A DNA stretch of 63,830 nt, the filler included, from Bigelowiella natans CCMP2755 (taxonomy: Eukaryota; Protista; Cercozoa), in the NCBI GenBank assembly GCA_000320545.1. It is 7 parts of 7 records of this genome, joined end to end, with 100 filler letters (N's around TTAATTAATTAA, not from the genome) between each part and the next. Parts side by side here need not be neighbours in the genome. Positions count along the whole stretch, not along the records: positions 10,993 to 38,023 come from ADNK01003156.1; 6 more parts are not named here. One strand, written 5' to 3'. The translations under genes were made by a program, and so were the position numbers. This document shows positions 18,335 through 36,011 of this stretch, piece by piece. Position 1 is the first letter of the stretch; each line of letters begins with the position of its first letter. The notes under the pieces are model-generated. The model was not told the DNA's origin. It did no database searches and saw nothing but the letters and a program-made list of their open reading frames with translations.

Positions 18335-18376
<42 letters not shown>

Positions 18377-18861: not shown

Positions 18862-19259
18862 TCACATGTGAGCCCCACTGAATGCATTGAAACGCTGTGA
18901 TGGGATTGCACTGCTTGCCATCATCAACAAGCAAGAGAGCAGACTCTCCAACTCCCCGACAACAAGCCTGACATGAAAACCTAGAAACACTTGCGTCGCT
19001 GAATCATGATGCAATTGCAGCAGGCAGTGCAGTTCTGTGTGATCTTTGCTTGTTTTGTGCATGCGGATGCAGCAGTGACAAGTCCGACAAAGATCAATCA
19101 ACATGGTTAACAAACAGAATAACAATGGATTGTGCACGAGCATGTCGATCATGTCGCATTGAAACGATCTGGCTTTGCACACACAGCAGCAGCGATCAAA
19201 ATTGCGCACTCTTGTGATTGTTGATTTTGCTTTTCGAGGATCCCCAGGTCCACTCAAGA
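18862..19259 (-). pseudogene. Decayed reading frame, 3' part (split from 24176-24630 by the LTR element)
   Basis: After removing the element and one AAGA copy, the frame is continuous with 24180-24630; TG/CA-rich, Cys/His/Met-rich translation. Confidence 0.45.
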
Positions 19260-19585
19260 TGTTGCGCGTAAGGTGTTCACAGGCCGAGGCGCTACGTGCA
19301 CAAGTAGGCAGGGGGGGGGAAAGGCACGTTTGCTTCCTTTTGAAGAGTTGTGTTTATTTTTATTAAAGATTATATTTTTATTAAATCGTGCACTGCGTAA
19401 TCATTCGCGAAGCTTTCGCGAATGCCGCCGCACGTGGGGCAGCACACTTCCGGTGTGCTGCCATGAGTCCCGCCGGAACCCACGTGCCTATGCTGTATTA
19501 ATATCTACGTTATCTATATTCTATATCCGCGACAACCCCTTTGTTGTCGCACGTGACTTGTGCCCGCGTAGTGGTACGCGCTACA
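19260..19585 (-). repeat. 3' LTR of copy 1 (326 bp)
   Basis: tgttgcgcgta...tacgcgctaca; no difference from the other three LTRs found by eye. Confidence 0.97.
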
Positions 19586-19593
19586 CCTCCCCC
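19586..19593 (-). promoter_or_regulatory. Polypurine tract (GGGGGAGG)
   Basis: cctccccc on the plus strand directly abuts the 3' LTR. Confidence 0.85.
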
Positions 19594-19636
19594 AAGTCAC
19601 GTTGCTCCTTCCTTCCTTCCTTATTCCCTTATACCT

Positions 19637-22306
19637 TCATCGCTTTCGGAACTTCACCAACCACCAGGTAATAGATTCCTCTCTAACCTTATCTCCTTTG
19701 TCGCTTACCCAGAACTCACCTTCGTCCTTAGGTTCGTGTCCATACCAGCCCTCTGCATCAAGGTCCCCCAGGACCTTATACCAGTGCTCAAAGGGTAAGT
19801 CGGGAACAGCTAGGTAGAGTAGCTGATATTTTCCGTCCTTTATTTTCATAGCTACCCTCTCCATATTTCGTAATCCAGGGTAGCCTAGATAGACAATCTT
19901 CATGCGCCAATCGTCGTTCACCCTGACCTTATTGTTTCCATATTCCACATCGAACTTAGGTCGGGGTCCTAAACAAGGCATTGCTCGCTCCCACACAGTA
20001 GGGTTTACTTTAACATCCTCTAGGAGCTTCTCACCGATATCATAATTCTTTAGGTGACTGATGTGGCGCAAGGTGACCCTGTTCCCATCATAGATGTAGT
20101 ACTGCTTCCTCCCCTTCCTCTCGGTAACCTTTGCAACGCCACCCCAGAAGGGGTCTTGTTTATTTCTCGATCTCAGATTTACCTTGGCCCTAACATACTG
20201 TCCTTCCTTTAGAACTCGGCCATCGTACGGGACCTTCTCGTCTTCGCTCTCGGTATCGTCGTCGTTGTCGTCGCCTTCTTCCCTCTCCTTATCCTTGATA
20301 CCTCCCCCAGACGTGAAGGTGTCGTTTACTAACCCTTGTATCTTGTCTGGTGTGGTGCTATTTATCCTGCTTAGGTTGGCCAAGGTGCGGTGGAGTCGCT
20401 CTACCTTGGAGTTGGACTGGGCATAGTATACAGGTGAGGCATCAATATTAGGGTGTGGTAGCTGTAGAAGAGAGGTCTCATTATCCACATGTAACTTCTT
20501 TGGTATCTTGTTTATGCTAACTTCATCAGGGATAGCCTGGAGCTCAGACTCCCAGGTACGGTAGCAGTTAGTAAGCCTCTGCTTATATAAGCCTTTGTTC
20601 TTCTTAGCAACGTTGACCTTGATAATCTTTTTAACCCAGCACTTTCCAGTGGCCACATCAACGAAGGTAAGGTAGTGATAGCCATCGTACTTATAAACAT
20701 CAATTTGCACGATATCTAAGAAGTTCCTTGCTTTGATTTTCTTAGATGCACGGCTCTTGCTGGACTCCTTGGTGGCGACGCCTGCCGCCTTCAAGCTGGA
20801 GCACCTGCAGCCACGCAGGTATGTCCTTATCTCTTTTAGCTTGTAGGGCCAGTAGTAATGGTAGAGTAGAGCAGTGATATGGTTTTCTCCTACGTGTGCA
20901 GGTCCATGGGCGGTAAAGAGAAGGGCTCCCCTGGTCCGCCGTGGCACGTAGGTACGCCTAACATTATTAGTGTATACATATATCCTATCACTAAGTACCT
21001 CATGCTTGTGTTTGTATTTATCCAGGTGTTCTTGAAGGTGCTGGAGCTCCTCTGGCTCAGGCAGGAAGTCGCCGTCCTCGAAGGTAATCGCGTTAACCAT
21101 AGGGGTGACCTGGGTAGGGACTTTCTTTTCGAACAGCCTGCTGAAATAGTCAGCAAGCTGCTTGTCTCCTGGTGCGTAGACCACTGTCCTCTTGTCCCTA
21201 AACTCTTCCGTGTCCGCCCTCATAGCTGCATACTCATCGTTAGGCGCTTCGAGCTTGCGGTCGATGCCTAGGAGGGGCTTGTGGTCAGTCATTAAGGTGA
21301 AGCTGGGCACCGACAGCAGGTAGTATCTTAGTTTCCTCTGCGCCTCAGTCATGGCTTTATACTCTCCTTTTGTAGGGCTGTACTTGGCCTCAGCTGCTGT
21401 GCAGGCCCTGCCCCACACCCGTATGATCTGCTGGTCTTGGGTAAGTACAGCAGCCATACCTAGCTTAGACCAGTCTGTCCATAGGGTAGCTGGTCTAGTA
21501 GTGTCTAGCTTAGCATTCAATAGGGTGTTGCTGCATAACTTTATTAGGTTATCGAAGTGGGCATCAAGGCCAGCCTTGGCCCACACCTTAGCGAAGCTGA
21601 GGCCTACAGAGTTCTCCTTCCGGTAAGCAGTAGTAAAAGCAGCTGCAGTCCTAGCGTAGGTAGGGGAGAACCTACGTAGTATCCAAGCTGCAGTCTGCAA
21701 GAATGACTTTAACTCCTTTGCATTCTTAGGTTTAGGGGCTTGCTGTAGTGCTGCTACTTTCTCGGGGTTTGGGGTGATGCGGCCTTGCTCCAGGTAATAT
21801 CCACACCACTTGATTCTTGTAGCTAGGAATGTACACTTCTGCAGTCTAATAGTAAAACCGAAGTGTGCAAACCTAATAAATATATTTTCCAGGAGGAAGA
21901 TCTGAGCGACGACTGTGTTGGTACATATTATGTCATCATCCACATACACAAACACAAACACCCACAACACAGACGCCATCCCATCATGTGTGTATGCCCT
22001 GTAGTTCTGACTACTGAACGCATCCCCTGATATGCTTAGGCCGTAAGGGAATACGACGAAGTGCCACTTCCTGTGCCTGCTGGAGAACGCGGTAATGGGG
22101 CGGGAGGTTTTGTGGATGGGTGTCTGCATGTATGATTCATTTTTATCTAGGGAAGAGTAGTATTTGTATCCTATGACGTGTTCAATAACGTCATCTATCC
22201 TTGGTGTAGGTGTCTGGATCCTCTTTATTACTCGGTTGTGGCGGATGAAGTTGTGCGCCAGGCGGAAGAAAGGGTAAGTAGGTTTCTTAGCTAGCACATG
22301 TCTCAC
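19637..22306 (-). CDS. Pol remnant (RT-RNase H-integrase-MTase-like tail), uncoupled from gag
   Basis: Same sequence as the C-terminal 889 aa of the copy-2 polyprotein; annotated start is GTG; protease lost in the deletion. Confidence 0.85.
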   Translation of the reverse strand: MRHVLAKKPTYPFFRLAHNFIRHNRVIKRIQTPTPRIDDVIEHVIGYKYYSSLDKNESYMQTPIHKTSRPITAFSSRHRKWHFVVFPYGLSISGDAFSSQNYRAYTHDGMASVLWVFVFVYVDDDIICTNTVVAQIFLLENIFIRFAHFGFTIRLQKCTFLATRIKWCGYYLEQGRITPNPEKVAALQQAPKPKNAKELKSFLQTAAWILRRFSPTYARTAAAFTTAYRKENSVGLSFAKVWAKAGLDAHFDNLIKLCSNTLLNAKLDTTRPATLWTDWSKLGMAAVLTQDQQIIRVWGRACTAAEAKYSPTKGEYKAMTEAQRKLRYYLLSVPSFTLMTDHKPLLGIDRKLEAPNDEYAAMRADTEEFRDKRTVVYAPGDKQLADYFSRLFEKKVPTQVTPMVNAITFEDGDFLPEPEELQHLQEHLDKYKHKHEVLSDRIYVYTNNVRRTYVPRRTRGALLFTAHGPAHVGENHITALLYHYYWPYKLKEIRTYLRGCRCSSLKAAGVATKESSKSRASKKIKARNFLDIVQIDVYKYDGYHYLTFVDVATGKCWVKKIIKVNVAKKNKGLYKQRLTNCYRTWESELQAIPDEVSINKIPKKLHVDNETSLLQLPHPNIDASPVYYAQSNSKVERLHRTLANLSRINSTTPDKIQGLVNDTFTSGGGIKDKEREEGDDNDDDTESEDEKVPYDGRVLKEGQYVRAKVNLRSRNKQDPFWGGVAKVTERKGRKQYYIYDGNRVTLRHISHLKNYDIGEKLLEDVKVNPTVWERAMPCLGPRPKFDVEYGNNKVRVNDDWRMKIVYLGYPGLRNMERVAMKIKDGKYQLLYLAVPDLPFEHWYKVLGDLDAEGWYGHEPKDEGEFWVSDKGDKVREESITWWLVKFRKR

Positions 22307-22409
22307 GTTCCATGGTGAGTTGCTTGGCTCTATCTTCCCTTCCTTTGCCCATTCATTGATCTGCCACTCTATCTTTTCCCAGTCCGCTTCCGGTCGCCTA
22401 TGTTCTGGG

Positions 22410-23810
22410 TCATTGATGATGCACTCTTCGTATCCCTTCTTTAGCTCGATCTTTACTGGGGTAAGCTTGCTGGAGGGCTTCGTCGTCGGCTTTGATACTG
22501 TTCTGCTTTTTGTTCTTATATTTATTGTTCTTCCCGTTGTTGCTGCCTTGCCATTTGCTGTTGTTATATCCTTGTCCTCTGCCTTTCTTTCTCTTTAACT
22601 TCTCGTAGTGTTCGTTGAGCTGCCTGATCGTCATCCTGGGTCGTCCTTCTTTCCTGTCTCTGCAGTCTTTAGCGGTGTGTTTCCCTTTACGTGAGCAGTA
22701 TCCGCAACGTCGGTTACCTTCCCTGTCCTTGTACCAGTCTCGCTGCGGCTTAATAGCGTTAATGTTTCCTATGCCAGGTACCTTAGGGCTGGTAAACTTG
22801 CGGTCCTGCTCCTGCTCGCGTAGGGATATAGCCTGCACTGCTGCCTCCATCGTGGTGTAGCCTTTCTCCGTAACGTAAGTGGATTCCTTTATCTTTAACT
22901 TGAACTCTTCAAACCTTGCCTGATCATCACCTGTGTTGTAATTAAAATCATGTAGTTCGTCGATCATATCCTGGAAGCGCGTGGCAAAGTCTCTAACAGG
23001 TTCTCTCTCATGCTGCATCATTGCTCTGTATTTTCTAATAGCCTGGGGTAGGGAGTTAGCATCCTGTTCATTTACAAAAGCCTTCATTATCGCCTCAACG
23101 TCTCGTAGCCCACTAACTGTAGTGTGTATTTTCTCTAGCTGCCTGATCCGGGTCCTGCCTGTCTCGTAAAGGTCCATTGCCTGATCATCACCTGTGTTGT
23201 AATTAAAATCATGTAGTTCGTCGATCATATTAAAGTCGCAGAGTATACTCCTAGCGTTCTTCCACCACCTCCTTGCCTCACCTCTTTTCCCGTTGTATTT
23301 CGTTATCATAACCGGTGCTGTTTTAACAGACATGAACTGGGTGTTCCGCTGTACCGGCTGCTGCTGCTTGACGGTGCTCTGGGTCGTCCCCCGCGAGGCG
23401 CCCAGACCCCCGTCGTTCCTAAACAAAGCTGCCCACTCTGGAGGTAAGTCTGCTTCGTAATCCATGATGTCCTGCATGATAGCTGCCCAAACATCATGTG
23501 TCTGATACTTGTATTCTATCGATACTTTCAGTTTGGCGTAGTTGCTCGCCCTGGGTCGCAAGGCTCGTAATGCCATTACGACCTTCTTGCTTTCGGCGGC
23601 CACGTCCTCGTCGTCCGCCTCGTAGAAGTTCTCCAGTGCCTCTGCTGCTGCATCTGCTTTCTTAATCCCGGGTGCTGGTCCCGGCGGTGCCTGTGGAGGT
23701 GTTCCTCCTCCTTCCTTAGCGTCCGTATCGCCCTTCCTTTCCTGTTTCTGCTCGTGCCCTTGCACGGCCTGCGAGCCAAAGTCCTGCTGTTCTTCTAGCT
23801 GCTGTGACAT
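22410..23810 (-). CDS. Gag-only ORF with a frameshifted 3' tail (466 aa)
   Basis: Same ATG as copy 2; keeps the zinc knuckle; after the deletion junction at about 22492 it reads SIKADDEALQQ...RVHHQ*. Confidence 0.85.
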   Translation of the reverse strand: MSQQLEEQQDFGSQAVQGHEQKQERKGDTDAKEGGGTPPQAPPGPAPGIKKADAAAEALENFYEADDEDVAAESKKVVMALRALRPRASNYAKLKVSIEYKYQTHDVWAAIMQDIMDYEADLPPEWAALFRNDGGLGASRGTTQSTVKQQQPVQRNTQFMSVKTAPVMITKYNGKRGEARRWWKNARSILCDFNMIDELHDFNYNTGDDQAMDLYETGRTRIRQLEKIHTTVSGLRDVEAIMKAFVNEQDANSLPQAIRKYRAMMQHEREPVRDFATRFQDMIDELHDFNYNTGDDQARFEEFKLKIKESTYVTEKGYTTMEAAVQAISLREQEQDRKFTSPKVPGIGNINAIKPQRDWYKDREGNRRCGYCSRKGKHTAKDCRDRKEGRPRMTIRQLNEHYEKLKRKKGRGQGYNNSKWQGSNNGKNNKYKNKKQNSIKADDEALQQAYPSKDRAKEGIRRVHHQ

Positions 23811-23826
23811 TGTTAGTCAAATCGTT

Positions 23827-23844
23827 TCCCGTGTGTGGAAGCCA
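23827..23844 (-). promoter_or_regulatory. Putative primer-binding site, copy 1
   Basis: TGGCTTCCACACACGGGA begins 5 nt inside the 5' LTR; the complement ends in CCA like a tRNA 3' end; primer tRNA not identified. Confidence 0.5.
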
Positions 23845-23849
23845 AAGGT

Positions 23850-24175
23850 TGTTGCGCGTAAGGTGTTCACAGGCCGAGGCGCTACGTGCACAAGTAGGCA
23901 GGGGGGGGGAAAGGCACGTTTGCTTCCTTTTGAAGAGTTGTGTTTATTTTTATTAAAGATTATATTTTTATTAAATCGTGCACTGCGTAATCATTCGCGA
24001 AGCTTTCGCGAATGCCGCCGCACGTGGGGCAGCACACTTCCGGTGTGCTGCCATGAGTCCCGCCGGAACCCACGTGCCTATGCTGTATTAATATCTACGT
24101 TATCTATATTCTATATCCGCGACAACCCCTTTGTTGTCGCACGTGACTTGTGCCCGCGTAGTGGTACGCGCTACA
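23850..24175 (-). repeat. 5' LTR of copy 1 (326 bp)
   Basis: Same TG...CA sequence as the other LTRs. Confidence 0.97.
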
Positions 24176-24630
24176 AAGACTTCATTGCTTTCTGCTCACT
24201 GCGCACATGCAACATGGATGGATGACCACGTGATTGTGATCATGGACCTTGCAACTCCAGAAACAAACAGGTCCTGTGAGAGGTGTTGCAATGCAACGCA
24301 AAACATGCACGCGTGTCGTGCACGCGAACAAACTGTTTCACTCACTCACACATCGTTTTGGTCGGCACCATCAATGGTGGCCACGTCCAAACGTTGCACG
24401 CTTCAATTGTCTACATTGGACTCGCTAGCTCGTGGAAGCTCGGTTAGTGTGAAATTGGAAAACCCTTGTTTTTCTTTTGGCCTTGATGTGACAACACTGA
24501 ACGTTGGCCGGATGAGACTCGACAGTGCATGCTCCCCTTTTCGAATGAGAATGCATGCCGTTCTGACGGGAACGACAACGCTCGACGTCTTTCCACGGGA
24601 AGCATGCAGGCCGTTAAGCACAAAGCACAA
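24176..24630 (-). pseudogene. Decayed reading frame, 5' part
   Basis: ORF 24403-24630 is in the same frame as 18862-19257 once the insertion is removed; internal stops at 24403, 24346 and 24196 are all TGA. Confidence 0.45.
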
Positions 24631-25103
24631 TCACACAGTTGCATTGTGCTGCCCCTAGAGCGTCATGTCGAGACAAAGGCCCTTCTGAGAATGCTACCCC
24701 GATTCCTTGCAATTTGCACAAACGACAGCGATTATTTGATGACGCGCCTGTTTTTGGGAATGGATTTCGCATGGGAACAGCCTAGACTTTGCATGCAAAT
24801 GTGCCGGGTTTCATCTCATACATGGGTAAGCAGCCGTGCGAGGCTCGTCTGTGCTTCTGAAGACCCAACGTGTGGATGGACTATAAATAGAAGAACCATC
24901 CAATGGCGCCTGCTGCATAACGGCAGAGATAAAGAAATAAAAATATCTATATCATATACACTTATTGACGAACACCAACACATTGCGTTCCCTTCAATCG
25001 AAGCCTCAAATCATTTGGAGTAAAACGTTATCTGAGGAACAAAGGTACAAATCAGTCTATTCTACCTTGAGTCTTCGTTTTGTGTGATATAACGTGCAAT
25101 TAG

Positions 25104-25967
25104 ATGTATACTCCTTCTGGGGCTAATGAGCTTACTGTTGCTGCTATGGGTGGCTTCCAGTGGCTGCTTGCATTTAGTCTTCTTGTTTTCTGTGGCACCC
25201 AAGTTTTTGTTGCCCACACCAGAAATCGTACAAAATCGTACGTACACCGTTTTAACTTTTTGGTCTCTATATTTCTAACGGTGATGGCGATAGATCCTCA
25301 AAGATTATATGGTAGTTATGATCTTTCCTCGTATTTTGGTCTGGATTTATCTCTCATTTTTGTATTTTAGGAATCTATCCTTGGCAGTTGGTGTTTGGAT
25401 TGTGGGCCTGCGGGAAAGCTTGTCTCTGTTTGAGTTTATCTATTGTTTTTGTACTCGTTATTCGGGCAAAGGCGCGTATAAAGAAGATATGTCTTCCGAA
25501 AAAGCACATTGCTGTGACTTGTTTTGGAACATTATTCGTACTTGCCTTACATACATGCGAAATTGTCACGACAGCTATTGATGGGGCGGTCGGAAATGGT
25601 GTATTCACAGCGCTACAAATGTTTCTAGGATCGATTTACTTCCTTTATTTGACGTGGCCTCTACAGTATCTGCGAGAGGAACAGCATCGAACTATTGAAG
25701 TCATGGTGTCAAGTCGAAAAGAATCGTTTCGAAATGTAGTCGGAGACGGTAAATATGTAAACCCAAATCCTAATTCATCGTTCAAAGATTCCTGTTTTCC
25801 TGTTTTCTAATCAGAAATATTGAAAAAGATCATGTACAAGTTGGACGTTCTTATCAATATCGCGCTTTTCATTTCTGTGTCTTCTCTCCTATCCGCACTT
25901 GTAAACCCTAACTGTTGAAATTATCTATTCCCAGAAATATTATATGCACTTGTTAACCAATACTAGA

Positions 25968-26018
<51 letters not shown>

Positions 26019-27074
26019 TACATTAGGCCATCACAATATTAATGGCAGTATTTAACGATATATCCCTAGCCTTTTACCAAGGAGACAATCCATCCGTTAA
26101 GGGCATAATTTTCGAGGTTTGATAGCTACTACATTAAATCAAATTGTCTTCAATGAGTACGAAATGAATGCCAATTATTATTGCAGATGAATCATTTCAT
26201 CTCGATGTGTTTCTCCCTTGGCTGGGCAGTGTATTACACTTGGGTTCCAGTAACAGCAAAAGATTTGAGGAATCTAAGCAAACCGAGCGGAGTAATTACT
26301 CCTCAAAGCGGAAGTAAACGTAGGAGATCGTCACTTAGATCGGTTTCTAAGCTGTCACCCTCTAAGAAGATGTCGCAAACTTTGACCGCCACGGGGTATA
26401 CTAATAGTATGACGCGCCATTCGAAGAGCGATTTAAAAGAGAGCAGGGAGAGTATCAGCCGCAAAACCAGTCTTCCACCATCGCACAGTTTGAAAAATCA
26501 AATGCGCGCGTTCTTAGGAAATCGTGAGGATCATAACATAACAAAATTTACCACACCACATCCAGTGTCTAGAACAAACACTCCGATGAAGACACATCGA
26601 TCAAATGTGTCAACCCCGATGAAAACTCATAGATCGAACGCATCTAACCCGAGTGTGGGAGTAGAACAGAAAGAAAGAAAACGTAGACCATCTACAGTTT
26701 CGTTGGCAGATAACTTTTCAAATGCTTCACCAACGAATCAAATTGTCAGCAAACACATGCATCAACTGAAAATACCTTCAGTATCGCCCACACGGAATCA
26801 TTATCATCAGCAACTAAAACGACAGATGCAGACTCCCTCAGCTTGTGATAATTTGTGCATTTTAGACACCCCTCCACACAGAACTGCAGAATCGAATCAG
26901 AATAACGTAAATCCAATTCGTCCTGAAGTAAGGTCAAACAGGACGTCGATATCCTCAATGACAAACATTGTCAGAATGAGTCACACAAGAATGACACCTA
27001 AAAATATGGACACCATTGTTACTCCCGCAATGAAGACACAAAAAGATGAAACGTTAGAGCTTGCAACTGTTTAG
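25104..27074 (+). CDS. Multi-pass (about 7 TM, GPCR-like) membrane protein with a long Ser/Thr/Pro/Arg-rich C-tail
   Basis: Hydrophobic exons (GGFQWLLAFSLLVFCG; FNFLVSIFLTVMAIDPQRLYG|IYPWQLVFG; CLCLSLSIVFVLVI; GVFTALQMFLGSIYFLYLTWPL; INIALFISVSSLL; FISMCFSLGWAVYYTWVP) followed by a low-complexity tail; short GT-AG introns; start codon tentative. Confidence 0.75.
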
Positions 27075-27301
27075 GGATTAATCATTTGATTTTCTTCACC
27101 CATGAAAAATCGCATTCGAACTACAACCAACAAATGTAACTGTAGTAACAATTAAGCTATCAGATTTCATGCCTATTCAATCTGCATTGTGACTTTTGTG
27201 CGTTTGAATGCATGAGAAGATTCATCATGGGCACAGATGACTTCGTTCCATGGACTGTGTTCCGTGGCGAAGTGTGTCAATGACAGGCTCGGATCACTGC
27301 A

Positions 27302-27627
27302 TGTTGCGCGTAAGGTGTTCACAGGCCGAGGCGCTACGTGCACAAGTAGGCAGGGGGGGGGAAAGGCACGTTTGCTTCCTTTTGAAGAGTTGTGTTTATT
27401 TTTATTAAAGATTATATTTTTATTAAATCGTGCACTGCGTAATCATTCGCGAAGCTTTCGCGAATGCCGCCGCACGTGGGGCAGCACACTTCCGGTGTGC
27501 TGCCATGAGTCCCGCCGGAACCCACGTGCCTATGCTGTATTAATATCTACGTTATCTATATTCTATATCCGCGACAACCCCTTTGTTGTCGCACGTGACT
27601 TGTGCCCGCGTAGTGGTACGCGCTACA
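27302..27627 (-). repeat. 3' LTR of copy 2 (326 bp)
   Basis: Same sequence as the other LTRs. Confidence 0.97.
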
Positions 27628-27635
27628 CCTCCCCC
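27628..27635 (-). promoter_or_regulatory. Polypurine tract (GGGGGAGG)
   Basis: Abuts the 3' LTR. Confidence 0.85.
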
Positions 27636-27678
27636 AAGTCACGTTGCTCCTTCCTTCCTTCCTTATTCCCTTAGACCT

Positions 27679-30600
27679 TCATCGCTTTCGGAACTTCACC
27701 AACCACCAGGTAATAGATTCCTCTCTAACCTTATCTCCTTTGTCGCTTACCCAGAACTCACCTTCGTCCTTAGGTTCGTGTCCATACCAGCCCTCTGCAT
27801 CAAGGTCCCCCAGGACCTTATACCAGTGCTCAAAGGGTAAGTCGGGAACAGCTAGGTAGAGTAGCTGATATTTTCCGTCCTTTATTTTCATAGCTACCCT
27901 CTCCATATTTCGTAATCCAGGGTAGCCTAGATAGACAATCTTCATGCGCCAATCGTCGTTCACCCTGACCTTATTGTTTCCATATTCCACATCGAACTTA
28001 GGTCGGGGTCCTAAACAAGGCATTGCTCGCTCCCACACAGTAGGGTTTACTTTAACATCCTCTAGGAGCTTCTCACCGATATCATAATTCTTTAGGTGAC
28101 TGATGTGGCGCAAGGTGACCCTGTTCCCATCATAGATGTAGTACTGCTTCCTCCCCTTCCTCTCGGTAACCTTTGCAACGCCACCCCAGAAGGGGTCTTG
28201 TTTATTTCTCGATCTCAGATTTACCTTGGCCCTAACATACTGTCCTTCCTTTAGAACTCGGCCATCGTACGGGACCTTCTCGTCTTCGCTCTCGGTATCG
28301 TCGTCGTTGTCGTCGCCTTCTTCCCTCTCCTTATCCTTGATACCTCCCCCAGACGTGAAGGTGTCGTTTACTAACCCTTGTATCTTGTCTGGTGTGGTGC
28401 TATTTATCCTGCTTAGGTTGGCCAAGGTGCGGTGGAGTCGCTCTACCTTGGAGTTGGACTGGGCATAGTATACAGGTGAGGCATCAATATTAGGGTGTGG
28501 TAGCTGTAGAAGAGAGGTCTCATTATCCACATGTAACTTCTTTGGTATCTTGTTTATGCTAACTTCATCAGGGATAGCCTGGAGCTCAGACTCCCAGGTA
28601 CGGTAGCAGTTAGTAAGCCTCTGCTTATATAAGCCTTTGTTCTTCTTAGCAACGTTGACCTTGATAATCTTTTTAACCCAGCACTTTCCAGTGGCCACAT
28701 CAACGAAGGTAAGGTAGTGATAGCCATCGTACTTATAAACATCAATTTGCACGATATCTAAGAAGTTCCTTGCTTTGATTTTCTTAGATGCACGGCTCTT
28801 GCTGGACTCCTTGGTGGCGACGCCTGCCGCCTTCAAGCTGGAGCACCTGCAGCCACGCAGGTATGTCCTTATCTCTTTTAGCTTGTAGGGCCAGTAGTAA
28901 TGGTAGAGTAGAGCAGTGATATGGTTTTCTCCTACGTGTGCAGGTCCATGGGCGGTAAAGAGAAGGGCTCCCCTGGTCCGCCGTGGCACGTAGGTACGCC
29001 TAACATTATTAGTGTATACATATATCCTATCACTAAGTACCTCATGCTTGTGTTTGTATTTATCCAGGTGTTCTTGAAGGTGCTGGAGCTCCTCTGGCTC
29101 AGGCAGGAAGTCGCCGTCCTCGAAGGTAATCGCGTTAACCATAGGGGTGACCTGGGTAGGGACTTTCTTTTCGAACAGCCTGCTGAAATAGTCAGCAAGC
29201 TGCTTGTCTCCTGGTGCGTAGACCACTGTCCTCTTGTCCCTAAACTCTTCCGTGTCCGCCCTCATAGCTGCATACTCATCGTTAGGCGCTTCGAGCTTGC
29301 GGTCGATGCCTAGGAGGGGCTTGTGGTCAGTCATTAAGGTGAAGCTGGGCACCGACAGCAGGTAGTATCTTAGTTTCCTCTGCGCCTCAGTCATGGCTTT
29401 ATACTCTCCTTTTGTAGGGCTGTACTTGGCCTCAGCTGCTGTGCAGGCCCTGCCCCACACCCGTATGATCTGCTGGTCTTGGGTAAGTACAGCAGCCATA
29501 CCTAGCTTAGACCAGTCTGTCCATAGGGTAGCTGGTCTAGTAGTGTCTAGCTTAGCATTCAATAGGGTGTTGCTGCATAACTTTATTAGGTTATCGAAGT
29601 GGGCATCAAGGCCAGCCTTGGCCCACACCTTAGCGAAGCTGAGGCCTACAGAGTTCTCCTTCCGGTAAGCAGTAGTAAAAGCAGCTGCAGTCCTAGCGTA
29701 GGTAGGGGAGAACCTACGTAGTATCCAAGCTGCAGTCTGCAAGAATGACTTTAACTCCTTTGCATTCTTAGGTTTAGGGGCTTGCTGTAGTGCTGCTACT
29801 TTCTCGGGGTTTGGGGTGATGCGGCCTTGCTCCAGGTAATATCCACACCACTTGATTCTTGTAGCTAGGAATGTACACTTCTGCAGTCTAATAGTAAAAC
29901 CGAAGTGTGCAAACCTAATAAATATATTTTCCAGGAGGAAGATCTGAGCGACGACTGTGTTGGTACATATTATGTCATCATCCACATACACAAACACAAA
30001 CACCCACAACACAGACGCCATCCCATCATGTGTGTATGCCCTGTAGTTCTGACTACTGAACGCATCCCCTGATATGCTTAGGCCGTAAGGGAATACGACG
30101 AAGTGCCACTTCCTGTGCCTGCTGGAGAACGCGGTAATGGGGCGGGAGGTTTTGTGGATGGGTGTCTGCATGTATGATTCATTTTTATCTAGGGAAGAGT
30201 AGTATTTGTATCCTATGACGTGTTCAATAACGTCATCTATCCTTGGTGTAGGTGTCTGGATCCTCTTTATTACTCGGTTGTGGCGGATGAAGTTGTGCGC
30301 CAGGCGGAAGAAAGGGTAAGTAGGTTTCTTAGCTAGCACATGTCTCACGTTCCATGGTGAGTTGCTTGGCTCTATCTTCCCTTCCTTTGCCCATTCATTG
30401 ATCTGCCACTCTATCTTTTCCCAGTCCGCTTCCGGTCGCCTATGTTCTGGGTCATTGATGATGCACTCTTCGTATCCCTTCTTTAGCTCGATCTTTACTG
30501 GGGTAAGCTTGCTGGAGGGCTTCGTCGTCGGCTTGGTGATGTCAGAGTACTTCTCGTTTAATATTTTATTAATGTACTTTTTGCCTTTGTCGATATCCCA

Positions 30601-32652
30601 ATCATCAGCTGGGGGGGTCTTGTCCAGTAGCTCCGTTATCTGTCGGATGGTCTTGCCGGGGTTCTTCTTCCGTAGCTCGGTAGGTGTAGGTAGCTTGTTG
30701 TCCGCTAGGTCCATAAACTCTAACGCATTAACGCTTGACTCAGAGGTCCACTCGTCAAGCCGTATCATGTTCTGGCTGATGGTCCTGCCTGACTTCTTTG
30801 GCAACTTAGCAAAGTATATCTTGTGATTGTAGAATGATATGATCCCCCCTAATTTTTCTAGGGCATCCTGTCCGAGGAGTAGTTCCATGGATAAAGTCAT
30901 GGCTACTCGGGTCTTGATTTGGGTCTCCGCGTCGCTGCCAGGTATCTGTAGCTTTAGCATTAGCTCACCGACGGTCTTCATGGAAGAGCTTCCGTCTGCT
31001 TGAGCATATTTACGTTCTTTCTTAGTCACTTGATCCAATAGTCCTAACCTTCTTACTGTGCTTAGGCTTATGAAGGACTTCGGCATGCTGCCACTATCCC
31101 AAAGGGCAGGTAGTTTCTTGTAGTCTCCGTAGCTGTCTTTAACTTTAACCTTGGTCATAGCAACTTTGATAGTCCTGTTAGCGTCTTCGTCATTAATGTT
31201 GCATACTCCTAAGTTCTTTATGTCGTCTAGGGTCATGGGCTTGTCTTGGTCCTGCGTTGCTGGTACTGCTGTCTTCGTCGGCGCCTGCTTAAGGTGATCT
31301 AATATTCCGTTTATCTGCTGCTGTATAGCATTGATACTGTTCTGCTTTTTGTTCTTATATTTATTGTTCTTCCCGTTGTTGCTGCCTTGCCATTTGCTGT
31401 TGTTATATCCTTGTCCTCTGCCTTTCTTTCTCTTTAACTTCTCGTAGTGTTCGTTGAGCTGCCTGATCGTCATCCTGGGTCGTCCTTCTTTCCTGTCTCT
31501 GCAGTCTTTAGCGGTGTGTTTCCCTTTACGTGAGCAGTATCCGCAACGTCGGTTACCTTCCCTGTCCTTGTACCAGTCTCGCTGCGGCTTAATAGCGTTA
31601 ATGTTTCCTATGCCAGGTACCTTAGGGCTGGTAAACTTGCGGTCCTGCTCCTGCTCGCGTAGGGATATAGCCTGCACTGCTGCCTCCATCGTGGTGTAGC
31701 CTTTCTCCGTAACGTAAGTGGATTCCTTTATCTTTAACTTGAACTCTTCAAACCTTGCCTGATCATCACCTGTGTTGTAATTAAAATCATGTAGTTCGTC
31801 GATCATATCCTGGAAGCGCGTGGCAAAGTCTCTAACAGGTTCTCTCTCATGCTGCATCATTGCTCTGTATTTTCTAATAGCCTGGGGTAGGGAGTTAGCA
31901 TCCTGTTCATTTACAAAAGCCTTCATTATCGCCTCAACGTCTCGTAGCCCACTAACTGTAGTGTGTATTTTCTCTAGCTGCCTGATCCGGGTCCTGCCTG
32001 TCTCGTAAAGGTCCATGGCTTGCTTTATTATAGCTAGCCATTTGAGCTTGTCGTTTTCGGTGGGGTTAGGGGTAAAGTCGCAGAGTATACTCCTAGCGTT
32101 CTTCCACCACCTCCTTGCCTCACCTCTTTTCCCGTTGTATTTCGTTATCATAACCGGTGCTGTTTTAACAGACATGAACTGGGTGTTCCGCTGTACCGGC
32201 TGCTGCTGCTTGACGGTGCTCTGGGTCGTCCCCCGCGAGGCGCCCAGACCCCCGTCGTTCCTAAACAAAGCTGCCCACTCTGGAGGTAAGTCTGCTTCGT
32301 AATCCATGATGTCCTGCATGATAGCTGCCCAAACATCATGTGTCTGATACTTGTATTCTATCGATACTTTCAGTTTGGCGTAGTTGCTCGCCCTGGGTCG
32401 CAAGGCTCGTAATGCCATTACGACCTTCTTGCTTTCGGCGGCCACGTCCTCGTCGTCCGCCTCGTAGAAGTTCTCCAGTGCCTCTGCTGCTGCATCTGCT
32501 TTCTTAATCCCGGGTGCTGGTCCCGGCGGTGCCTGTGGAGGTGTTCCTCCTCCTTCCTTAGCGTCCGTATCGCCCTTCCTTTCCTGTTTCTGCTCGTGCC
32601 CTTGCACGGCCTGCGAGCCAAAGTCCTGCTGTTCTTCTAGCTGCTGTGACAT
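27679..32652 (-). CDS. Gag-Pol polyprotein, single ORF, 1657 aa
   Basis: Zinc knuckle CGYCSRKGKHTAKDC (31501-31545); protease LWDSGS (31090-31098); RT PYGLSISG and YVDD (29977-29988); RNase H LWTDWS, TDHKPL, ADYFSR; integrase H-x3-H...CRC, IVQID, LHVDN, SNSKVERLHRTL; GPF/Y-like FWGG...HISHLK; extra C-terminal domain of about 125 aa. Confidence 0.98.
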   Translation of the reverse strand: MSQQLEEQQDFGSQAVQGHEQKQERKGDTDAKEGGGTPPQAPPGPAPGIKKADAAAEALENFYEADDEDVAAESKKVVMALRALRPRASNYAKLKVSIEYKYQTHDVWAAIMQDIMDYEADLPPEWAALFRNDGGLGASRGTTQSTVKQQQPVQRNTQFMSVKTAPVMITKYNGKRGEARRWWKNARSILCDFTPNPTENDKLKWLAIIKQAMDLYETGRTRIRQLEKIHTTVSGLRDVEAIMKAFVNEQDANSLPQAIRKYRAMMQHEREPVRDFATRFQDMIDELHDFNYNTGDDQARFEEFKLKIKESTYVTEKGYTTMEAAVQAISLREQEQDRKFTSPKVPGIGNINAIKPQRDWYKDREGNRRCGYCSRKGKHTAKDCRDRKEGRPRMTIRQLNEHYEKLKRKKGRGQGYNNSKWQGSNNGKNNKYKNKKQNSINAIQQQINGILDHLKQAPTKTAVPATQDQDKPMTLDDIKNLGVCNINDEDANRTIKVAMTKVKVKDSYGDYKKLPALWDSGSMPKSFISLSTVRRLGLLDQVTKKERKYAQADGSSSMKTVGELMLKLQIPGSDAETQIKTRVAMTLSMELLLGQDALEKLGGIISFYNHKIYFAKLPKKSGRTISQNMIRLDEWTSESSVNALEFMDLADNKLPTPTELRKKNPGKTIRQITELLDKTPPADDWDIDKGKKYINKILNEKYSDITKPTTKPSSKLTPVKIELKKGYEECIINDPEHRRPEADWEKIEWQINEWAKEGKIEPSNSPWNVRHVLAKKPTYPFFRLAHNFIRHNRVIKRIQTPTPRIDDVIEHVIGYKYYSSLDKNESYMQTPIHKTSRPITAFSSRHRKWHFVVFPYGLSISGDAFSSQNYRAYTHDGMASVLWVFVFVYVDDDIICTNTVVAQIFLLENIFIRFAHFGFTIRLQKCTFLATRIKWCGYYLEQGRITPNPEKVAALQQAPKPKNAKELKSFLQTAAWILRRFSPTYARTAAAFTTAYRKENSVGLSFAKVWAKAGLDAHFDNLIKLCSNTLLNAKLDTTRPATLWTDWSKLGMAAVLTQDQQIIRVWGRACTAAEAKYSPTKGEYKAMTEAQRKLRYYLLSVPSFTLMTDHKPLLGIDRKLEAPNDEYAAMRADTEEFRDKRTVVYAPGDKQLADYFSRLFEKKVPTQVTPMVNAITFEDGDFLPEPEELQHLQEHLDKYKHKHEVLSDRIYVYTNNVRRTYVPRRTRGALLFTAHGPAHVGENHITALLYHYYWPYKLKEIRTYLRGCRCSSLKAAGVATKESSKSRASKKIKARNFLDIVQIDVYKYDGYHYLTFVDVATGKCWVKKIIKVNVAKKNKGLYKQRLTNCYRTWESELQAIPDEVSINKIPKKLHVDNETSLLQLPHPNIDASPVYYAQSNSKVERLHRTLANLSRINSTTPDKIQGLVNDTFTSGGGIKDKEREEGDDNDDDTESEDEKVPYDGRVLKEGQYVRAKVNLRSRNKQDPFWGGVAKVTERKGRKQYYIYDGNRVTLRHISHLKNYDIGEKLLEDVKVNPTVWERAMPCLGPRPKFDVEYGNNKVRVNDDWRMKIVYLGYPGLRNMERVAMKIKDGKYQLLYLAVPDLPFEHWYKVLGDLDAEGWYGHEPKDEGEFWVSDKGDKVREESITWWLVKFRKR

Positions 32653-32668
32653 TGTTAGTCAAATCGTT

Positions 32669-32686
32669 TCCCGTGTGTGGAAGCCA
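32669..32686 (-). promoter_or_regulatory. Putative primer-binding site, copy 2
   Basis: TGGCTTCCACACACGGGA, 5 nt from the 5' LTR. Confidence 0.5.
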
Positions 32687-32691
32687 AAGGT

Positions 32692-33017
32692 TGTTGCGCG
32701 TAAGGTGTTCACAGGCCGAGGCGCTACGTGCACAAGTAGGCAGGGGGGGGGAAAGGCACGTTTGCTTCCTTTTGAAGAGTTGTGTTTATTTTTATTAAAG
32801 ATTATATTTTTATTAAATCGTGCACTGCGTAATCATTCGCGAAGCTTTCGCGAATGCCGCCGCACGTGGGGCAGCACACTTCCGGTGTGCTGCCATGAGT
32901 CCCGCCGGAACCCACGTGCCTATGCTGTATTAATATCTACGTTATCTATATTCTATATCCGCGACAACCCCTTTGTTGTCGCACGTGACTTGTGCCCGCG
33001 TAGTGGTACGCGCTACA
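32692..33017 (-). repeat. 5' LTR of copy 2 (326 bp)
   Basis: Same sequence as the other LTRs. Confidence 0.97.
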
Positions 33018-33021
33018 TGCA

Positions 33022-33420
33022 TCACTGCAACAAATTGTGGTCGATGGCGTGTGTAAATCTAAAAATGCGCTGTGCAGCACGGACGAACATGCACACATCT
33101 ATCACGGATCATTCACCATTGCACCATCGAACAGATTATGTGAGACGCACCAGCTAGCCAGCCACTACTAGACTACTAGACTAGCGCAGCAGCGATCCGA
33201 ACTAGCTGTCTAGATGTGGCACAGATCTGATTTGATGGACACTCTAGCAATGTTGAATTCACACATCTATAGACCTAGACTAGCTAGCTAGTCTATAGTC
33301 TAGGTCTAGCTAGCTCTAGACTAGTAGAGCTAGTAGTAGAGACGAACGGCTGTAGGATTTCATGTAATCGTGTCAATTCACTCAGTTTCGTTCGTAAGTG
33401 CGTTGCATACTAGCATGCTA
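33022..33420. other. TGCA/CTAG-rich island (right flank of copy 2)
   Basis: ctagactagctagctagtctatagtctaggtctagctagctctagactagtagagctag at about 33275-33335. Confidence 0.7.
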
Positions 33421-33505
33421 CGTTCATTTACATTCATTTGCACAATCTCTGTTGGCACAATCTGCTGCTGTCAAAAAAAGTAAGTTTGTTGCGAAAAGTT
33501 GCATT

Positions 33506-34560
33506 TTACATAAATGGGCTTGATGGCCTATCAGGCTCAACTAGCTCATCACTTTCAATTGATGATATTGAACTTCGTTGAGTGGTTGAATCATATTCAG
33601 TAGCCCAACAACTTGATAATCGACTCAAAAAATCCAAGAACATGTAAAGGTTTATGACGTAGCTTCGATCACCGAACCGTCTCTTCAAACTGCCTAAGCT
33701 AATGTTGCAGCAAGGGCAGAAAATCTGACAATTATTTTCATACAAAATGTATGAGTTTCTATTTGAATTTTTAATTGGAAAATGTTAGCATTTTGGTACA
33801 TGTAAAGCGGCACAAAAGTCCCATCTCTCCGAATAGCAACAACACAGATTAGCAATCTGTAGAAAGAAATGTTATTCATCTCTAAAATTGAACCGCTAGT
33901 AAAGTGCAGATTAATTTAAACGCCGTCATCTACTAAATTAGCACTCTCTAACTCTAATTCTTTATGACCGAAGAGCATGTACTATCTGGGTTGTCATCAT
34001 CTACGAGAAGAAACCCACATGGACAACACAGCCAGCCACACATTGTACACTGAAGTGTGAAAACAAAATTGACATAATGTAATTGTATACTGTGTCATTT
34101 TCACTCTAAATATCTAGAATCTAAAAGTTTATTTGAATTTCCTATTAAGGTAATGTTGTTTGCAGAATATGTTGCTGTCAAAGTAGATGTTGTATTTACC
34201 GGAACTGTCAAAGGAATGCAGAAAGGTGCGCAACAAATGCATTGAGGATACTGATAACATCTATGCGCTGAATAAAATGTGATTGGTGATAGTTTTTAAA
34301 GATGATAGATAGTGCTACTTAAGATAGTCGAAAATTGCAAGAAGATGTGAGCTCAAATCCTCAGCACATTCAGCGAACGTACCATCTTTGTCTTCTCGAT
34401 CTTCGAAGTCGGTCAAGATGTACGGCTGAAAGTTAACATATACGAAGCCTCCACGAAGTCGGGGCGAACATGCAAGAAGCTCAAAATTTCCTTCGTCAAT
34501 CCCGCTGGGGTCTAGAGCGAGTACTTCAAGAACTTCACCTTCAGCATCAGTCGTCCCCAT
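33506..34560 (-). CDS. Hypothetical protein (multi-exon, unresolved)
   Basis: ATG at 34560 gives MGTTDAEGEVLEVLALDPSGIDEGNFELLACSPRLRGGF...; ORF 33506-33745 may be the last exon; no family recognised. Confidence 0.35.
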
Positions 34561-35041
34561 TTTGCCAGGTGAATAAGAATAATTTCTCTCTGAACTCCAA
34601 AAACCTGCTACGACATAACAATTGCCTATGTTTTTCAAGTAAAATGACCTGAATTCGAACCACAATTTGAAAAATCTCCCACGAAATGCTTTTTGCAGTG
34701 CAATTAGTGCTAGAATGAGGCTGTGACAAATTCAATATTTCGGATACAAACAGCGAGGGAAAATTAGTTATTTGATCATGCGCGACACAAGCAGCGTAAA
34801 TTTGGAAAAACGACGCACGTGCGGAAAGCAGCGACGTCTTTGGGGAATCATTGCGGTTTCGTATGTCATTGGACTACTAGATTTTCATTTTTGAACAAAT
34901 CTCCCTCCATTTCTTTCTACTATGGTCAACACGCAGAACATTCTAGAATCCTTCTGTGTGCATGAATGTTTTTTGTCGAAATTTGTTCCACAGAAATCAT
35001 GCGGCTTCATGTGTGACTTCGAAATTTTCAGTTGTCGCTGA

Positions 35042-36011
<970 letters not shown>

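What the first reader, a model, noticed from the sequence alone, without database searches (positions are those of the whole stretch)
27679..28056. Gypsy integrase fused to a degenerate DIRS/Dam-like N6-adenine methyltransferase fold, in place of a chromodomain
Seen: after the GPF/Y-like module, the polyprotein continues VKVNPTVWERAMPCLGPRPKFDVEYGNNKV-RVNDDWRMKIVYLGYPGLRNMERVAMKIKDGKYQLLYLAVPDLPFEHWYKVLGDL...GEFW...ITWWLVKF (also 19637-20014 in copy 1). Established: the Dam-like MT domain of DIRS retrotransposons follows roughly L.P.vF..i...wG.P.vDlFAs..N.k ... DAf...W...aY.fPP...i.rvl.Ki.....ilvaP.Wp...Wy..L. By eye the order and spacing match (NPTVW, GPRP, FD, NNK, DW, VY, ERV.MKI, VPDLP...WY..L). 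The SAM-binding DxFA becomes DVEY, the DAF segment is missing and the catalytic [NDF]PP[YF] becomes GYPG. Inference: a catalytically dead MTase repurposed as a DNA- or methyl-reading targeting module on the integrase, which would fit both insertions lying in deamination-scarred islands. I am not aware of this architecture being described, but could not check.
Basis: partly seen in the sequence, partly recalled or inferred. Interest (0 to 1): 0.88.

Follow-up and report, generated by a model that had tools for sequence, protein, structure and literature searches.

The report
Dead Dam-like methyltransferase domain on integrase
The last ~125 amino acids of a young Ty3/gypsy-type retrotransposon of the alga Bigelowiella natans are predicted to fold like a small phage-type DNA adenine methyltransferase whose catalytic motif has been replaced, so the domain probably serves the integrase as a non-enzymatic binding module; retrotransposons with intact versions of this domain were described in a 2026 preprint, so this is a new variant, not a new kind.

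Summary
ORF 27679-32652 (-) encodes a 1657-aa gag-PR-RT-RNaseH-IN polyprotein of a full-length LTR element (27302-33017). A second copy with one internal deletion lies at 19260-24175. All four 326-nt LTRs are identical. The host is Bigelowiella natans. The C-terminal tail is a conserved domain: 48 cluster representatives, 28-41% identical outside B. natans, and C-terminal in the near-full-length hits. Sequence methods do not link it to Dam (no Pfam hit for the window; hhalign E about 0.5). Structure prediction does. The AlphaFold2 model has pLDDT 93. Its best matches among viral models are phage DNA N-6-adenine-methyltransferases (E 1.4e-5, TM about 0.6, full length), the same entries that a Pfam-verified phage Dam model finds. 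Secondary-structure elements are collinear, and G-Y-P-G sits where Dam has N-P-P-Y. None of 55 family rows covering that site keeps the catalytic motif; most have G-x-P-G. So the fold and the "dead enzyme" reading are supported. The targeting or methyl-reader role remains inference, and the "deamination-scarred islands" argument fails. Gypsy elements with intact Dam domains (DAM-LTRs) were described in May 2026; this Pfam-invisible, motif-substituted rhizarian form is a new variant.

The parts
27302..33017 (-). Copy 2: full-length LTR retrotransposon (5716 bp), Ty3/gypsy-type gene order, single intact polyprotein ORF
   Evidence: Self-BLAST and repeat search; LTR ends TG..CA and 4-bp target-site duplication
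32692..33017 (-). 5' LTR of copy 2 (326 nt)
   Evidence: Identical to the other three LTRs
27302..27627 (-). 3' LTR of copy 2 (326 nt), preceded by a purine-rich tract
27298..27301 (.). Target-site duplication TGCA of copy 2 (partner at 33018-33021)
33018..33021 (.). Target-site duplication TGCA of copy 2 (partner at 27298-27301)
27679..32652 (-). Polyprotein ORF, 1657 aa: gag, protease, RT, RNase H, integrase, tail
30856..31116 (-). Aspartyl protease region (residues 513-599)
   Evidence: Pfam gag-asp_proteas, E 0.0022, below the curated cut-off
29836..30261 (-). Reverse transcriptase (residues 798-939)
   Evidence: Pfam RVT_1, E 2.4e-8
29299..29601 (-). RNase H (residues 1018-1118)
   Evidence: Pfam RT_RNaseH E 2.1e-14 and RT_RNaseH_2 E 2e-10
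28846..28989 (-). Integrase zinc-binding domain (residues 1222-1269)
   Evidence: Pfam Integrase_H2C2, E 0.0022; weak match to a solved retroviral-type integrase, E 0.004
28393..28785 (-). Integrase catalytic core (about residues 1290-1420), approximate bounds
   Evidence: Read from the translation. 37-51% identical to relatives. No Pfam rve hit for the window protein, so the bounds are inferred
28081..28266 (-). SH3-like integrase C-terminal domain (GPY/F-type module), preceded by an acidic linker
   Evidence: The A1 profile, which covers this segment in relatives, matches eL21 SH3-like barrels, E 3.9e-4; translation
27682..28074 (-).
   Evidence: AF2 pLDDT 93.1, pTM 0.86. Foldseek on BFVD: best hits are phage DNA N-6-adenine-methyltransferases, E 1.4e-5, TM about 0.6. 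The same entries are found by a verified Dam model
27916..27927 (-). G-Y-P-G, the loop after the central strand, in the place of the catalytic N-P-P-Y of Dam
   Evidence: position after the equivalent strand; register in hhalign and in the Pfam Dam hit of relative P0036; family census
27991..27996 (-). F-D dipeptide at the end of the first core strand, matching the position of the invariant Asp of phage Dam
   Evidence: the correspondence is inferred from collinear secondary structure, not from a significant alignment
19260..24175 (-). Copy 1: same element with one internal deletion of about 0.8 kb; LTRs at 19260-19585 and 23850-24175; target-site duplication AAGA at 19256-19259 and 24176-24179
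19637..23810 (-). Copy 1 polyprotein gene, broken once (one out-of-frame internal deletion leaving two ORFs); the gag part also carries a short divergent patch
19640..20032 (-). Tail domain of copy 1, identical in protein sequence to copy 2

Best explanation
The tail is the C-terminal domain of the integrase of a young, multi-copy Ty3/gypsy-type LTR retrotransposon of Bigelowiella natans. It is predicted to have the compact alpha/beta fold of the small phage-type DNA N6-adenine methyltransferases (Pfam PF05869, 'Dam'), the kind of domain known from DIRS elements and from the recently described DAM-LTR retrotransposons. The order of elements is the same as in Dam: N-terminal helix, first strand ending in F-D, central strand, loop, helix, strand, helix, and a final strand pair. 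In the loop where Dam carries its catalytic N-P-P-Y, this whole family carries G-[aromatic/Cys]-P-G, so it lacks the Asn and the trailing aromatic residue. From what is established for amino-methyltransferases, it is therefore most likely not an adenine methyltransferase any more. The domain is nevertheless kept, at about the conservation level of the protease, in every sampled relative. It sits at the C-terminal end of integrase, where other LTR elements carry their tethering modules. Shown: the domain, its conservation, the predicted fold, the motif replacement. Inferred: loss of catalysis, and a role as a binding or tethering module that links the integration complex to a chromatin feature, a host protein or the element's own nucleic acid. 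Sub-confidences: Dam-type fold and common origin about 0.8; catalytically inactive about 0.7; tethering or targeting role about 0.35.
For: Real, conserved domain: 48 representatives at E<=1e-3. It is C-terminal in the near-full-length RT-RNaseH-IN polyprotein hits, from B. natans and metagenomes. Identity to relatives is 28-39% in the tail, against RT 42-45%, IN core 27-51%, protease 27-38% and gag 24-26%. Fold: the AF2 model has pLDDT 93.1. On BFVD, 11 hits reach E<=1e-3; the best is E 1.4e-5 with probability 1.00, TM 0.57-0.64 and full-length coverage, and the named ones are phage DNA N-6-adenine-methyltransferases. A model of a Pfam-verified phage Dam (PF05869, E 5e-36; model) retrieves the same entries: all 14 top tail hits are among its top 24. 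PDB hits are weak, but the top probabilities go to SAM-dependent methyltransferases (aTrm11 0.98; cap adenosine-N6 methyltransferase 0.94-0.97). Secondary structure is collinear: tail H23-33, E41-42, E58-60, loop, H66-78, E83-89, H95-102, E105-111, E135-141; Dam H14-24, E26-29, E60-63, N-P-P-Y, H71-80, E83-88, H94-102, E105-109, E131-136. Register: hhalign pairs W-L-G-y-P-G with W-C-N-P-P-Y. The one Pfam Dam hit among about 40 scanned relatives covers the same segment (P0036, residues 13-66 against profile 50-106). Motif census: 0 of 55 rows covering the site have the Dam motif; most have G-x-P-G and 5 have S-F-P-[LF]. An MMETSP transcript ORF is 100% identical to the tail, so the element is transcribed.
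Against: No sequence method gives a significant link to Dam. There is no Pfam or PHROGs hit for the window tail. hhalign gives E 0.43-0.56 with probability 0.1. The single Pfam hit is 14.4 bits against a cut-off of 28.1. No PDB match reaches E<=1e-3. The fold evidence rests on predicted, not solved, structures on both sides. Loss of catalysis is inferred from a motif only. The F-D motif and the motif Pro are retained, so ligand binding cannot be excluded. For a DNA-reading role: the domains are not basic (median net charge -2, range -20 to +5, against +4 for phage Dam). Only two insertion sites are available, with unrelated 4-bp duplications, so no target preference can be shown.
Confidence: 0.6

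Rival explanations
1. The domain is still an enzyme: a SAM-dependent methyltransferase, or another SAM-using activity, with a non-canonical active-site loop, acting on the element's cDNA or RNA-DNA hybrid as proposed for DAM-LTRs.
For: The loop G-x-P-G is itself strongly conserved, which shows selection on that site. The F-D at the end of the first strand, the motif Pro and an aromatic residue two positions before the loop are kept. The preprint describes such an aromatic residue upstream of the Asn-Pro-Pro triplet in true DAMs. Five divergent rows have S-F-P-[LF], nearer to the canonical pattern.
Against: None of 55 rows has a polar Asn/Asp-type residue followed by Pro-Pro-aromatic, whereas the preprint finds Asn-Pro-Pro in almost all prokaryotic and eukaryotic DAMs. 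From general knowledge of amino-methyltransferases, the first motif residue is needed for catalysis. Even intact eukaryotic DAMs showed no activity when expressed in E. coli.
Confidence: 0.1
2. The likeness to Dam is convergence or generic Rossmann-like architecture; the tail is a lineage-specific integrase extension with no methyltransferase ancestry.
For: All sequence-based tests are non-significant. Foldseek on PDB gives no hit at E<=1e-3, and some non-methyltransferase alpha/beta proteins appear in the list. Both compared structures are predictions.
Against: The best viral-library hits are specifically the small Dam family, over the full length, at E down to 1.4e-5. They coincide with the hits of a verified Dam model. 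Elements are collinear with near-identical spacing from the central strand onward. Three independent alignments place the conserved loop on the catalytic motif. Among the 11 weak Pfam families seen for 30 members, one is Dam out of 24,736 models.
Confidence: 0.12
3. The domain is a non-catalytic Dam relic whose job is not target choice. It might support integrase multimerisation or intasome assembly, or bind the element's own nucleic acid or a replication-stage host factor.
For: Net charge varies widely and is often acidic, which fits protein-protein contacts better than general DNA binding. The domain follows the SH3-like domain directly. No shared sequence pattern is evident in the two target-site duplications.
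Against: Nothing direct. By general knowledge, C-terminal integrase appendages in other LTR elements (chromodomains and yeast Ty targeting domains) act in target choice, which makes that the prior.
Confidence: 0.18

Closest known systems
DAM-LTR retrotransposons (Fernandez-Moreno et al., bioRxiv 10.64898/2026.05.21.726589, May 2026)
   Same: Ty3/gypsy-type LTR elements whose pol carries a prokaryote-like Dam domain. The predicted domain is a five-stranded sheet with flanking helices. It is found in unicellular eukaryotes.
   Different: The preprint reports the Asn-Pro-Pro triplet in almost all sampled DAMs, and its DAMs were found with the Pfam Dam model at E<=1e-5. The B. natans tail has G-Y-P-G and gives no Pfam hit. 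The reported lineages are Chlorophyta, an ochrophyte, Ichthyosporea, Pyropia and Euglena, and the text does not mention Bigelowiella or Rhizaria. In one reported lineage the domain lies between RT and integrase, whereas here it is the extreme C-terminus after the SH3-like domain.
Methyltransferase domain of DIRS retrotransposons
   Same: A Dam-like domain carried by a retrotransposon; the preprint proposes it as the source of the LTR-borne domains.
   Different: DIRS elements use a tyrosine recombinase and lack direct LTRs. This element has a zinc-binding/DDE-type integrase, direct 326-nt LTRs and 4-bp duplications. No DIRS sequence could be obtained with the tools, so descent from DIRS was not tested.
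Phage DNA N-6-adenine-methyltransferase, Pfam PF05869 (e.g. the 161-aa protein of Escherichia phage SSL-2009a, NC_012223)
   Same: Predicted fold, element order and spacing; Asp at the end of the first strand; Trp after the fifth-strand region.
   Different: The catalytic N-P-P-Y and the invariant D-T-x-T segment are replaced. The tail lacks the last strand and helix of the phage protein. Charge is neutral to acidic instead of basic. Sequence similarity is not significant.
Chromoviruses (gypsy elements with a chromodomain at the integrase C-terminus)
   Same: An extra globular domain appended after the integrase SH3-like/GPY-F module, the position associated with tethering (general knowledge; the preprint cites chromodomain-guided integration).
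   Different: No chromodomain is present. The appended fold is methyltransferase-like, and a tethering role is not shown.
Catalytically inactive methyltransferase paralogues used as binding partners (METTL14, DNMT3L; named from general knowledge, not tested here)
   Same: A methyltransferase fold with a degenerate active site, retained for a binding or scaffolding role.
   Different: Those are host proteins that act with an active partner. No active partner is known here, and none of them came back as a hit.

Membership tests
Pfam PF05869 Dam (phage-type DNA N6-adenine methyltransferase) | Sequence match to the family model above its curated cut-off (28.1 bits) | tested here: not met
   No hit for the window tail at E<=1. 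One of about 40 relatives scores 14.4 bits, E 0.032. hhalign against a Dam alignment gives E 0.43-0.56.
Pfam PF05869 Dam (phage-type DNA N6-adenine methyltransferase) | Three-dimensional fold and order of secondary-structure elements | tested here: met
   Both sides are predicted models. Foldseek gives E 1.4e-5, TM about 0.6, full length. Hit lists overlap reciprocally. Elements are collinear.
Pfam PF05869 Dam (phage-type DNA N6-adenine methyltransferase) | Catalytic tetrapeptide N-P-P-Y after the central strand (invariant in alignment A4) | tested here: not met
   The window has G-Y-P-G. 0 of 55 family rows covering the site have the Dam motif, against invariant N64 P65 P66 Y67 in A4.
Pfam PF05869 Dam (phage-type DNA N6-adenine methyltransferase) | Cofactor binding and adenine methylation activity | not testable with these tools
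   Only sequence and predicted structure are available. The Asp at the end of the first strand is retained in most rows.
DAM-LTR retrotransposons (2026 preprint) | LTR retrotransposon with RT, RNase H, integrase and direct LTRs | tested here: met
DAM-LTR retrotransposons (2026 preprint) | DAM domain detectable with the Pfam model at E<=1e-5, and a conserved Asn-Pro-Pro triplet | tested here: not met
   the criteria are taken.
DAM-LTR retrotransposons (2026 preprint) | Placement inside the monophyletic eukaryotic DAM clade | not tested
   No DAM-TE sequences could be obtained with the tools at hand.
Ty3/gypsy (Metaviridae-type) LTR retrotransposons | Gene order PR-RT-RNaseH-IN in one pol, TG..CA LTRs, short target-site duplication | tested here: met
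   Domain order; LTR ends and 4-bp duplications. The RT and integrase matches are weak, so this is a divergent lineage.
Chromoviruses | Chromodomain at the integrase C-terminus | tested here: not met
   No chromodomain hit in the polyprotein or the tail.
DIRS retrotransposons | Tyrosine recombinase instead of a DDE integrase; no direct LTR pair | tested here: not met
   Integrase zinc-binding domain, a weak match to a solved DDE-type integrase, and direct LTRs.

The most novel reading that the evidence does not exclude
A retrotransposon lineage has converted a captured Dam methyltransferase into a pseudo-enzyme that keeps the base- or cofactor-binding pocket and uses it as a reader, for example of adenine-methylated, transcriptionally permissive chromatin. 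If so, Pfam-invisible Dam derivatives may be common in protist retroelements, and the spread of Dam-bearing elements would be underestimated.
Probability: 0.15. Interest if true: 0.8.

Novelty: new variant of a known kind. Interest (0 to 1): 0.55.

Why it matters
Dam-type domains on LTR retrotransposons were recognised only in 2026. Their role is open: the authors could not detect activity for intact versions. A lineage that has replaced the catalytic motif, yet keeps the domain under constraint in every sampled relative, argues that at least part of the domain's value to the element is non-catalytic. It also adds a further eukaryotic supergroup (Rhizaria). It shows that screens based on the Pfam model miss diverged members, so structure-based screens are needed. 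Finally, it offers a natural contrast for asking what these domains do: tail-bearing against tail-less families in one genome, and intact against substituted motif across lineages.

Tried and rejected
These approaches led nowhere or were set aside:

- **Sequence searches with the tail.** Pfam found nothing for the window. PHROGs found nothing. PDB sequence search with the single tail gave one chance-level hit. The A1 profile matched only eL21 through the SH3 segment.
- **Profile-profile comparison.** hhalign of the family against a phage Dam alignment gave the right register but E 0.43-0.56 in local, low-mact and global modes.
- **Profile search of the 5.8-billion-protein set with A2.** It returned family members only, no Dam.
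- **Search for relatives with an intact motif.** That survey was therefore not done.
- **More insertion sites.** The exact polyprotein is not on record in the contig index.
- **LTRs in relatives.** The two full-length metagenomic relatives (L002, L003) show no LTR pair on their contigs; why was not examined.
- **tRNA-gene targeting.** No tRNA genes lie in the piece.
- **'Deamination-scarred islands'.** CpG observed/expected in the flanks is 0.70-0.97. The flanks are merely AT-richer, with AT microsatellites.
- **Chromodomain, or another known integrase tail apart from the SH3-like domain.** None found.
Full report
**What is there.**
- ORF 27679-32652 (-) encodes a 1657-aa polyprotein.
- Pfam finds, in order: a weak gag match, an aspartyl protease (513-599), RT (798-939), RNase H (1018-1118) and the integrase zinc-binding domain (1222-1269).
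- The integrase segment weakly matches a solved retroviral-type integrase (E 0.004).
- After an acidic linker comes an SH3-like domain. An alignment profile that covers this segment in relatives matches the SH3-like barrel of ribosomal protein eL21.

**The two copies.**
- The ORF lies in a full-length LTR element, 27302-33017, with 326-nt LTRs ending TG..CA and a TGCA target-site duplication.
- A second copy, 19260-24175, has an AAGA duplication, so the two are independent insertions.
- All four LTRs are identical.
- The 3' 3.2 kb of the two copies differ at one base.
- Copy 1 has its polyprotein gene broken once, by an out-of-frame internal deletion of about 0.8 kb. It also carries a short divergent patch in gag.
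- The tail is identical in both copies.

**Host and copy number.**
- Near-identical proteins are all JGI gene models of Bigelowiella natans.
- These models are spliced or chimeric predictions across copies of this element on many scaffolds.
- One MMETSP transcript ORF is 100% identical to the tail, so the family is transcribed.

**Is the tail a real domain?** Yes.
- phmmer of residues 1515-1657 against 1.84 billion cluster representatives gives 48 hits at E<=1e-3 and 38 at E<=1e-10.
- Outside the B. natans copies, identity is 28-41%.
- In the near-full-length hits the match is at the extreme C-terminus, for example 1533-1677 of a 1680-aa protein and 1102-1241 of a 1243-aa protein.
- The long hits carry RT, RNase H and integrase zinc-binding domains.
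- They come from B. natans (two further families, P0018 and P0024) and from metagenomic contigs.
- Against these relatives the tail is 28-39% identical. This compares with RT 42-45%, integrase core 27-51%, protease 27-38%, gag 24-26% and the acidic linker 14-45%.
- The tail therefore evolves like a functional pol domain inherited with the element.
- Conserved features are [WYF]-[LIV]-G-x-P-G, V-P-[DE]-L-x-C-E-x-W, W-x-G, F-W and T-W-W. P79, W86, G100 and W125 are invariant in alignment A2.

**Is it Dam-like? Sequence methods say "not shown".**
- The window tail has no Pfam, PHROGs or PDB-sequence match.
- Of about 40 relatives scanned, one (P0036) hits Pfam Dam at E 0.032 and 14.4 bits, against a cut-off of 28.1. 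The match covers residues 13-66 against profile positions 50-106.
- To get a true comparator I fetched Escherichia phage SSL-2009a, using accession NC_012223 from PMC3025963. I confirmed that its 161-aa methyltransferase is PF05869 (E 5e-36).
- I then collected 18 relatives of it and aligned 14 of them.
- hhalign of the tail family against this alignment gives E 0.43-0.56 and probability 0.1, which is not significant. The aligned segment does pair the family's W-L-G-y-P-G with the Dam W-C-N-P-P-Y, and the V-P-E-L..W segment with the Dam D-T-S-T-x-W segment.

**Structure prediction says "yes".**
- AlphaFold2 on alignment A1 gives a confident model (pLDDT 93.1, pTM 0.86).
- Against solved structures no hit reaches E<=1e-3. 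The top probabilities go to SAM-dependent methyltransferases that modify amino groups: archaeal Trm11 at 0.98 and the cap-specific adenosine-N6 methyltransferase at 0.94-0.97 with TM 0.51-0.54.
- Against predicted viral structures there are 11 hits at E<=1e-3. The best is 1.4e-5, with probability 1.00, TM 0.57-0.64 and alignments spanning the whole query. The named ones are phage "DNA N-6-adenine-methyltransferase" proteins.
- As a control I modelled the verified phage Dam (pLDDT 89.4) and searched the same library. All 14 of the tail's best hits are among that model's top 24.
- The secondary-structure strings are collinear, with nearly the same spacing from the central strand on:
  - Tail: H23-33, E41-42, E58-60, loop G-Y-P-G at 62-65, H66-78, E83-89, H95-102, E105-111, E135-141.
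  - Dam: H14-24, E26-29, E60-63, N-P-P-Y at 64-67, H71-80, E83-88, H94-102, E105-109, E131-136, plus one further strand and helix that the tail lacks.
- The F-D of the tail sits at the end of the first strand, where the phage proteins have their invariant Asp.
- I conclude that the Dam-type fold is well supported and that common ancestry is likely. Both compared structures are predictions.

**Is it dead?**
- In the Dam alignment N64, P65, P66 and Y67 are invariant.
- The 2026 preprint reports Asn-Pro-Pro in almost all prokaryotic and eukaryotic DAMs.
- Of 61 family rows, 55 cover this site and none has that motif. Most have G-[Y/C/F/H/R/W]-P-G, five have S-F-P-[LF], and a few are irregular.
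- The replacement is therefore old and is itself under constraint.
- By general knowledge of amino-methyltransferases, loss of the first polar residue and of the trailing aromatic residue should abolish adenine methylation. This is inference from a motif, not a measurement.
- Retention of the F-D, of the motif Pro and of an aromatic residue two positions upstream leaves ligand binding open.

**What does it do?** Nothing here tests function.
- The position, after the SH3-like domain at the very end of integrase, is where chromoviruses carry a chromodomain. I therefore favour a binding or tethering module.
- Against a plain DNA-binding role, the domains are not basic: median net charge is -2, range -20 to +5, against +4 for phage Dam. 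They are rich in conserved tryptophans.
- The two insertions have unrelated 4-bp duplications.
- No tRNA gene is nearby.
- The flanks are AT-richer (GC about 0.40-0.42) but not CpG-depleted (observed/expected 0.70-0.97) and contain AT microsatellites.

**Comparison with what is known.**
[quoted passage not shown] These are Ty3/gypsy elements that captured DIRS-derived Dam domains at least four times. They occur in Chlorophyta, an ochrophyte, Ichthyosporea, Pyropia and Euglena, with a preserved catalytic pocket.
- The general architecture is therefore no longer undescribed.
- That screen used the Pfam model at E<=1e-5 on EukProt proteomes. It could not have seen this domain, and the text does not mention Bigelowiella or Rhizaria.
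- The present family fails two of that group's operational features: a Pfam-detectable domain and the Asn-Pro-Pro triplet. It shares the overall design.
- I file it as a new variant of a known kind. Whether it descends from a DIRS domain could not be tested, because no DAM-TE sequence was obtainable with the tools.

- The survey for relatives with an intact motif could not be run.
- More insertion sites could not be fetched.
- In notebook entry 2 I labelled the PDB hits with a four-residue motif pattern recalled from memory. The motifs cited here come from the window, from alignments A1-A4 and from the preprint.
- A local HMM of alignment A2 was built in scratch only to put family rows in register for counting.

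Noticed in passing
P0012 (B. natans gene model aug1.37_g11815), compared with window 27682-28023 (-): An older paralogous copy of the tail is 84% identical. 16 of its 18 amino-acid differences are explained by single T>C (9) or A>G (7) changes on the coding strand. The window residues are the family-typical ones, so this copy looks hypermutated with an A:T to G:C bias, not a cytosine-deamination pattern. The cause is unexplained.
   Followed up: partly
window 17993-19258, 24176-27301, 33018-34992: The flanks of both insertions are AT-richer (GC 0.40-0.42) than the elements (0.49), but CpG observed/expected is 0.70-0.97. (AT)n and (TA)n microsatellites lie at 18334-18373 and 25973-26020.
   Followed up: yes
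P0031 (GenBank GJL66747.1): A 745-aa RNase H-integrase-tail fragment of this eukaryotic retrotransposon clade is deposited as a hypothetical protein of a Nitrospirales bacterium MAG. It is probably a mis-binned eukaryotic contig.
   Followed up: no
P0001-P0008, P0014 (JGI Bigna1 gene models): The public gene models for this element are artefacts. Predicted 'introns' remove hundreds of internal residues, and several models fuse the tail to neighbouring host domains (WW and others).
   Followed up: partly
window 35042-35632 (+): An ORF with a Ras-family GTPase segment (Pfam Ras, E 6e-10) lies about 2 kb from the 5' LTR of copy 2. A weak GST C-terminal match lies at 13312-13665 (+). These are probably exons of host genes.
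   Followed up: no
window 22410-23810 (-) against 31328-32652 (-): The gag parts of the two copies differ by 21 substitutions and nine 1-2-nt alignment gaps in a short patch, while the rest of the elements is nearly identical. A 54-nt segment is also repeated within copy 1. This may be a variable low-complexity region or recombination between subfamilies.
   Followed up: partly
P0048, P0055, P0064, P0066, P0067 (metagenomic relatives): A divergent subgroup has S-F-P-[LF] instead of G-x-P-G at the catalytic-motif position, nearer to the canonical pattern. It may be an intermediate state.
   Followed up: no
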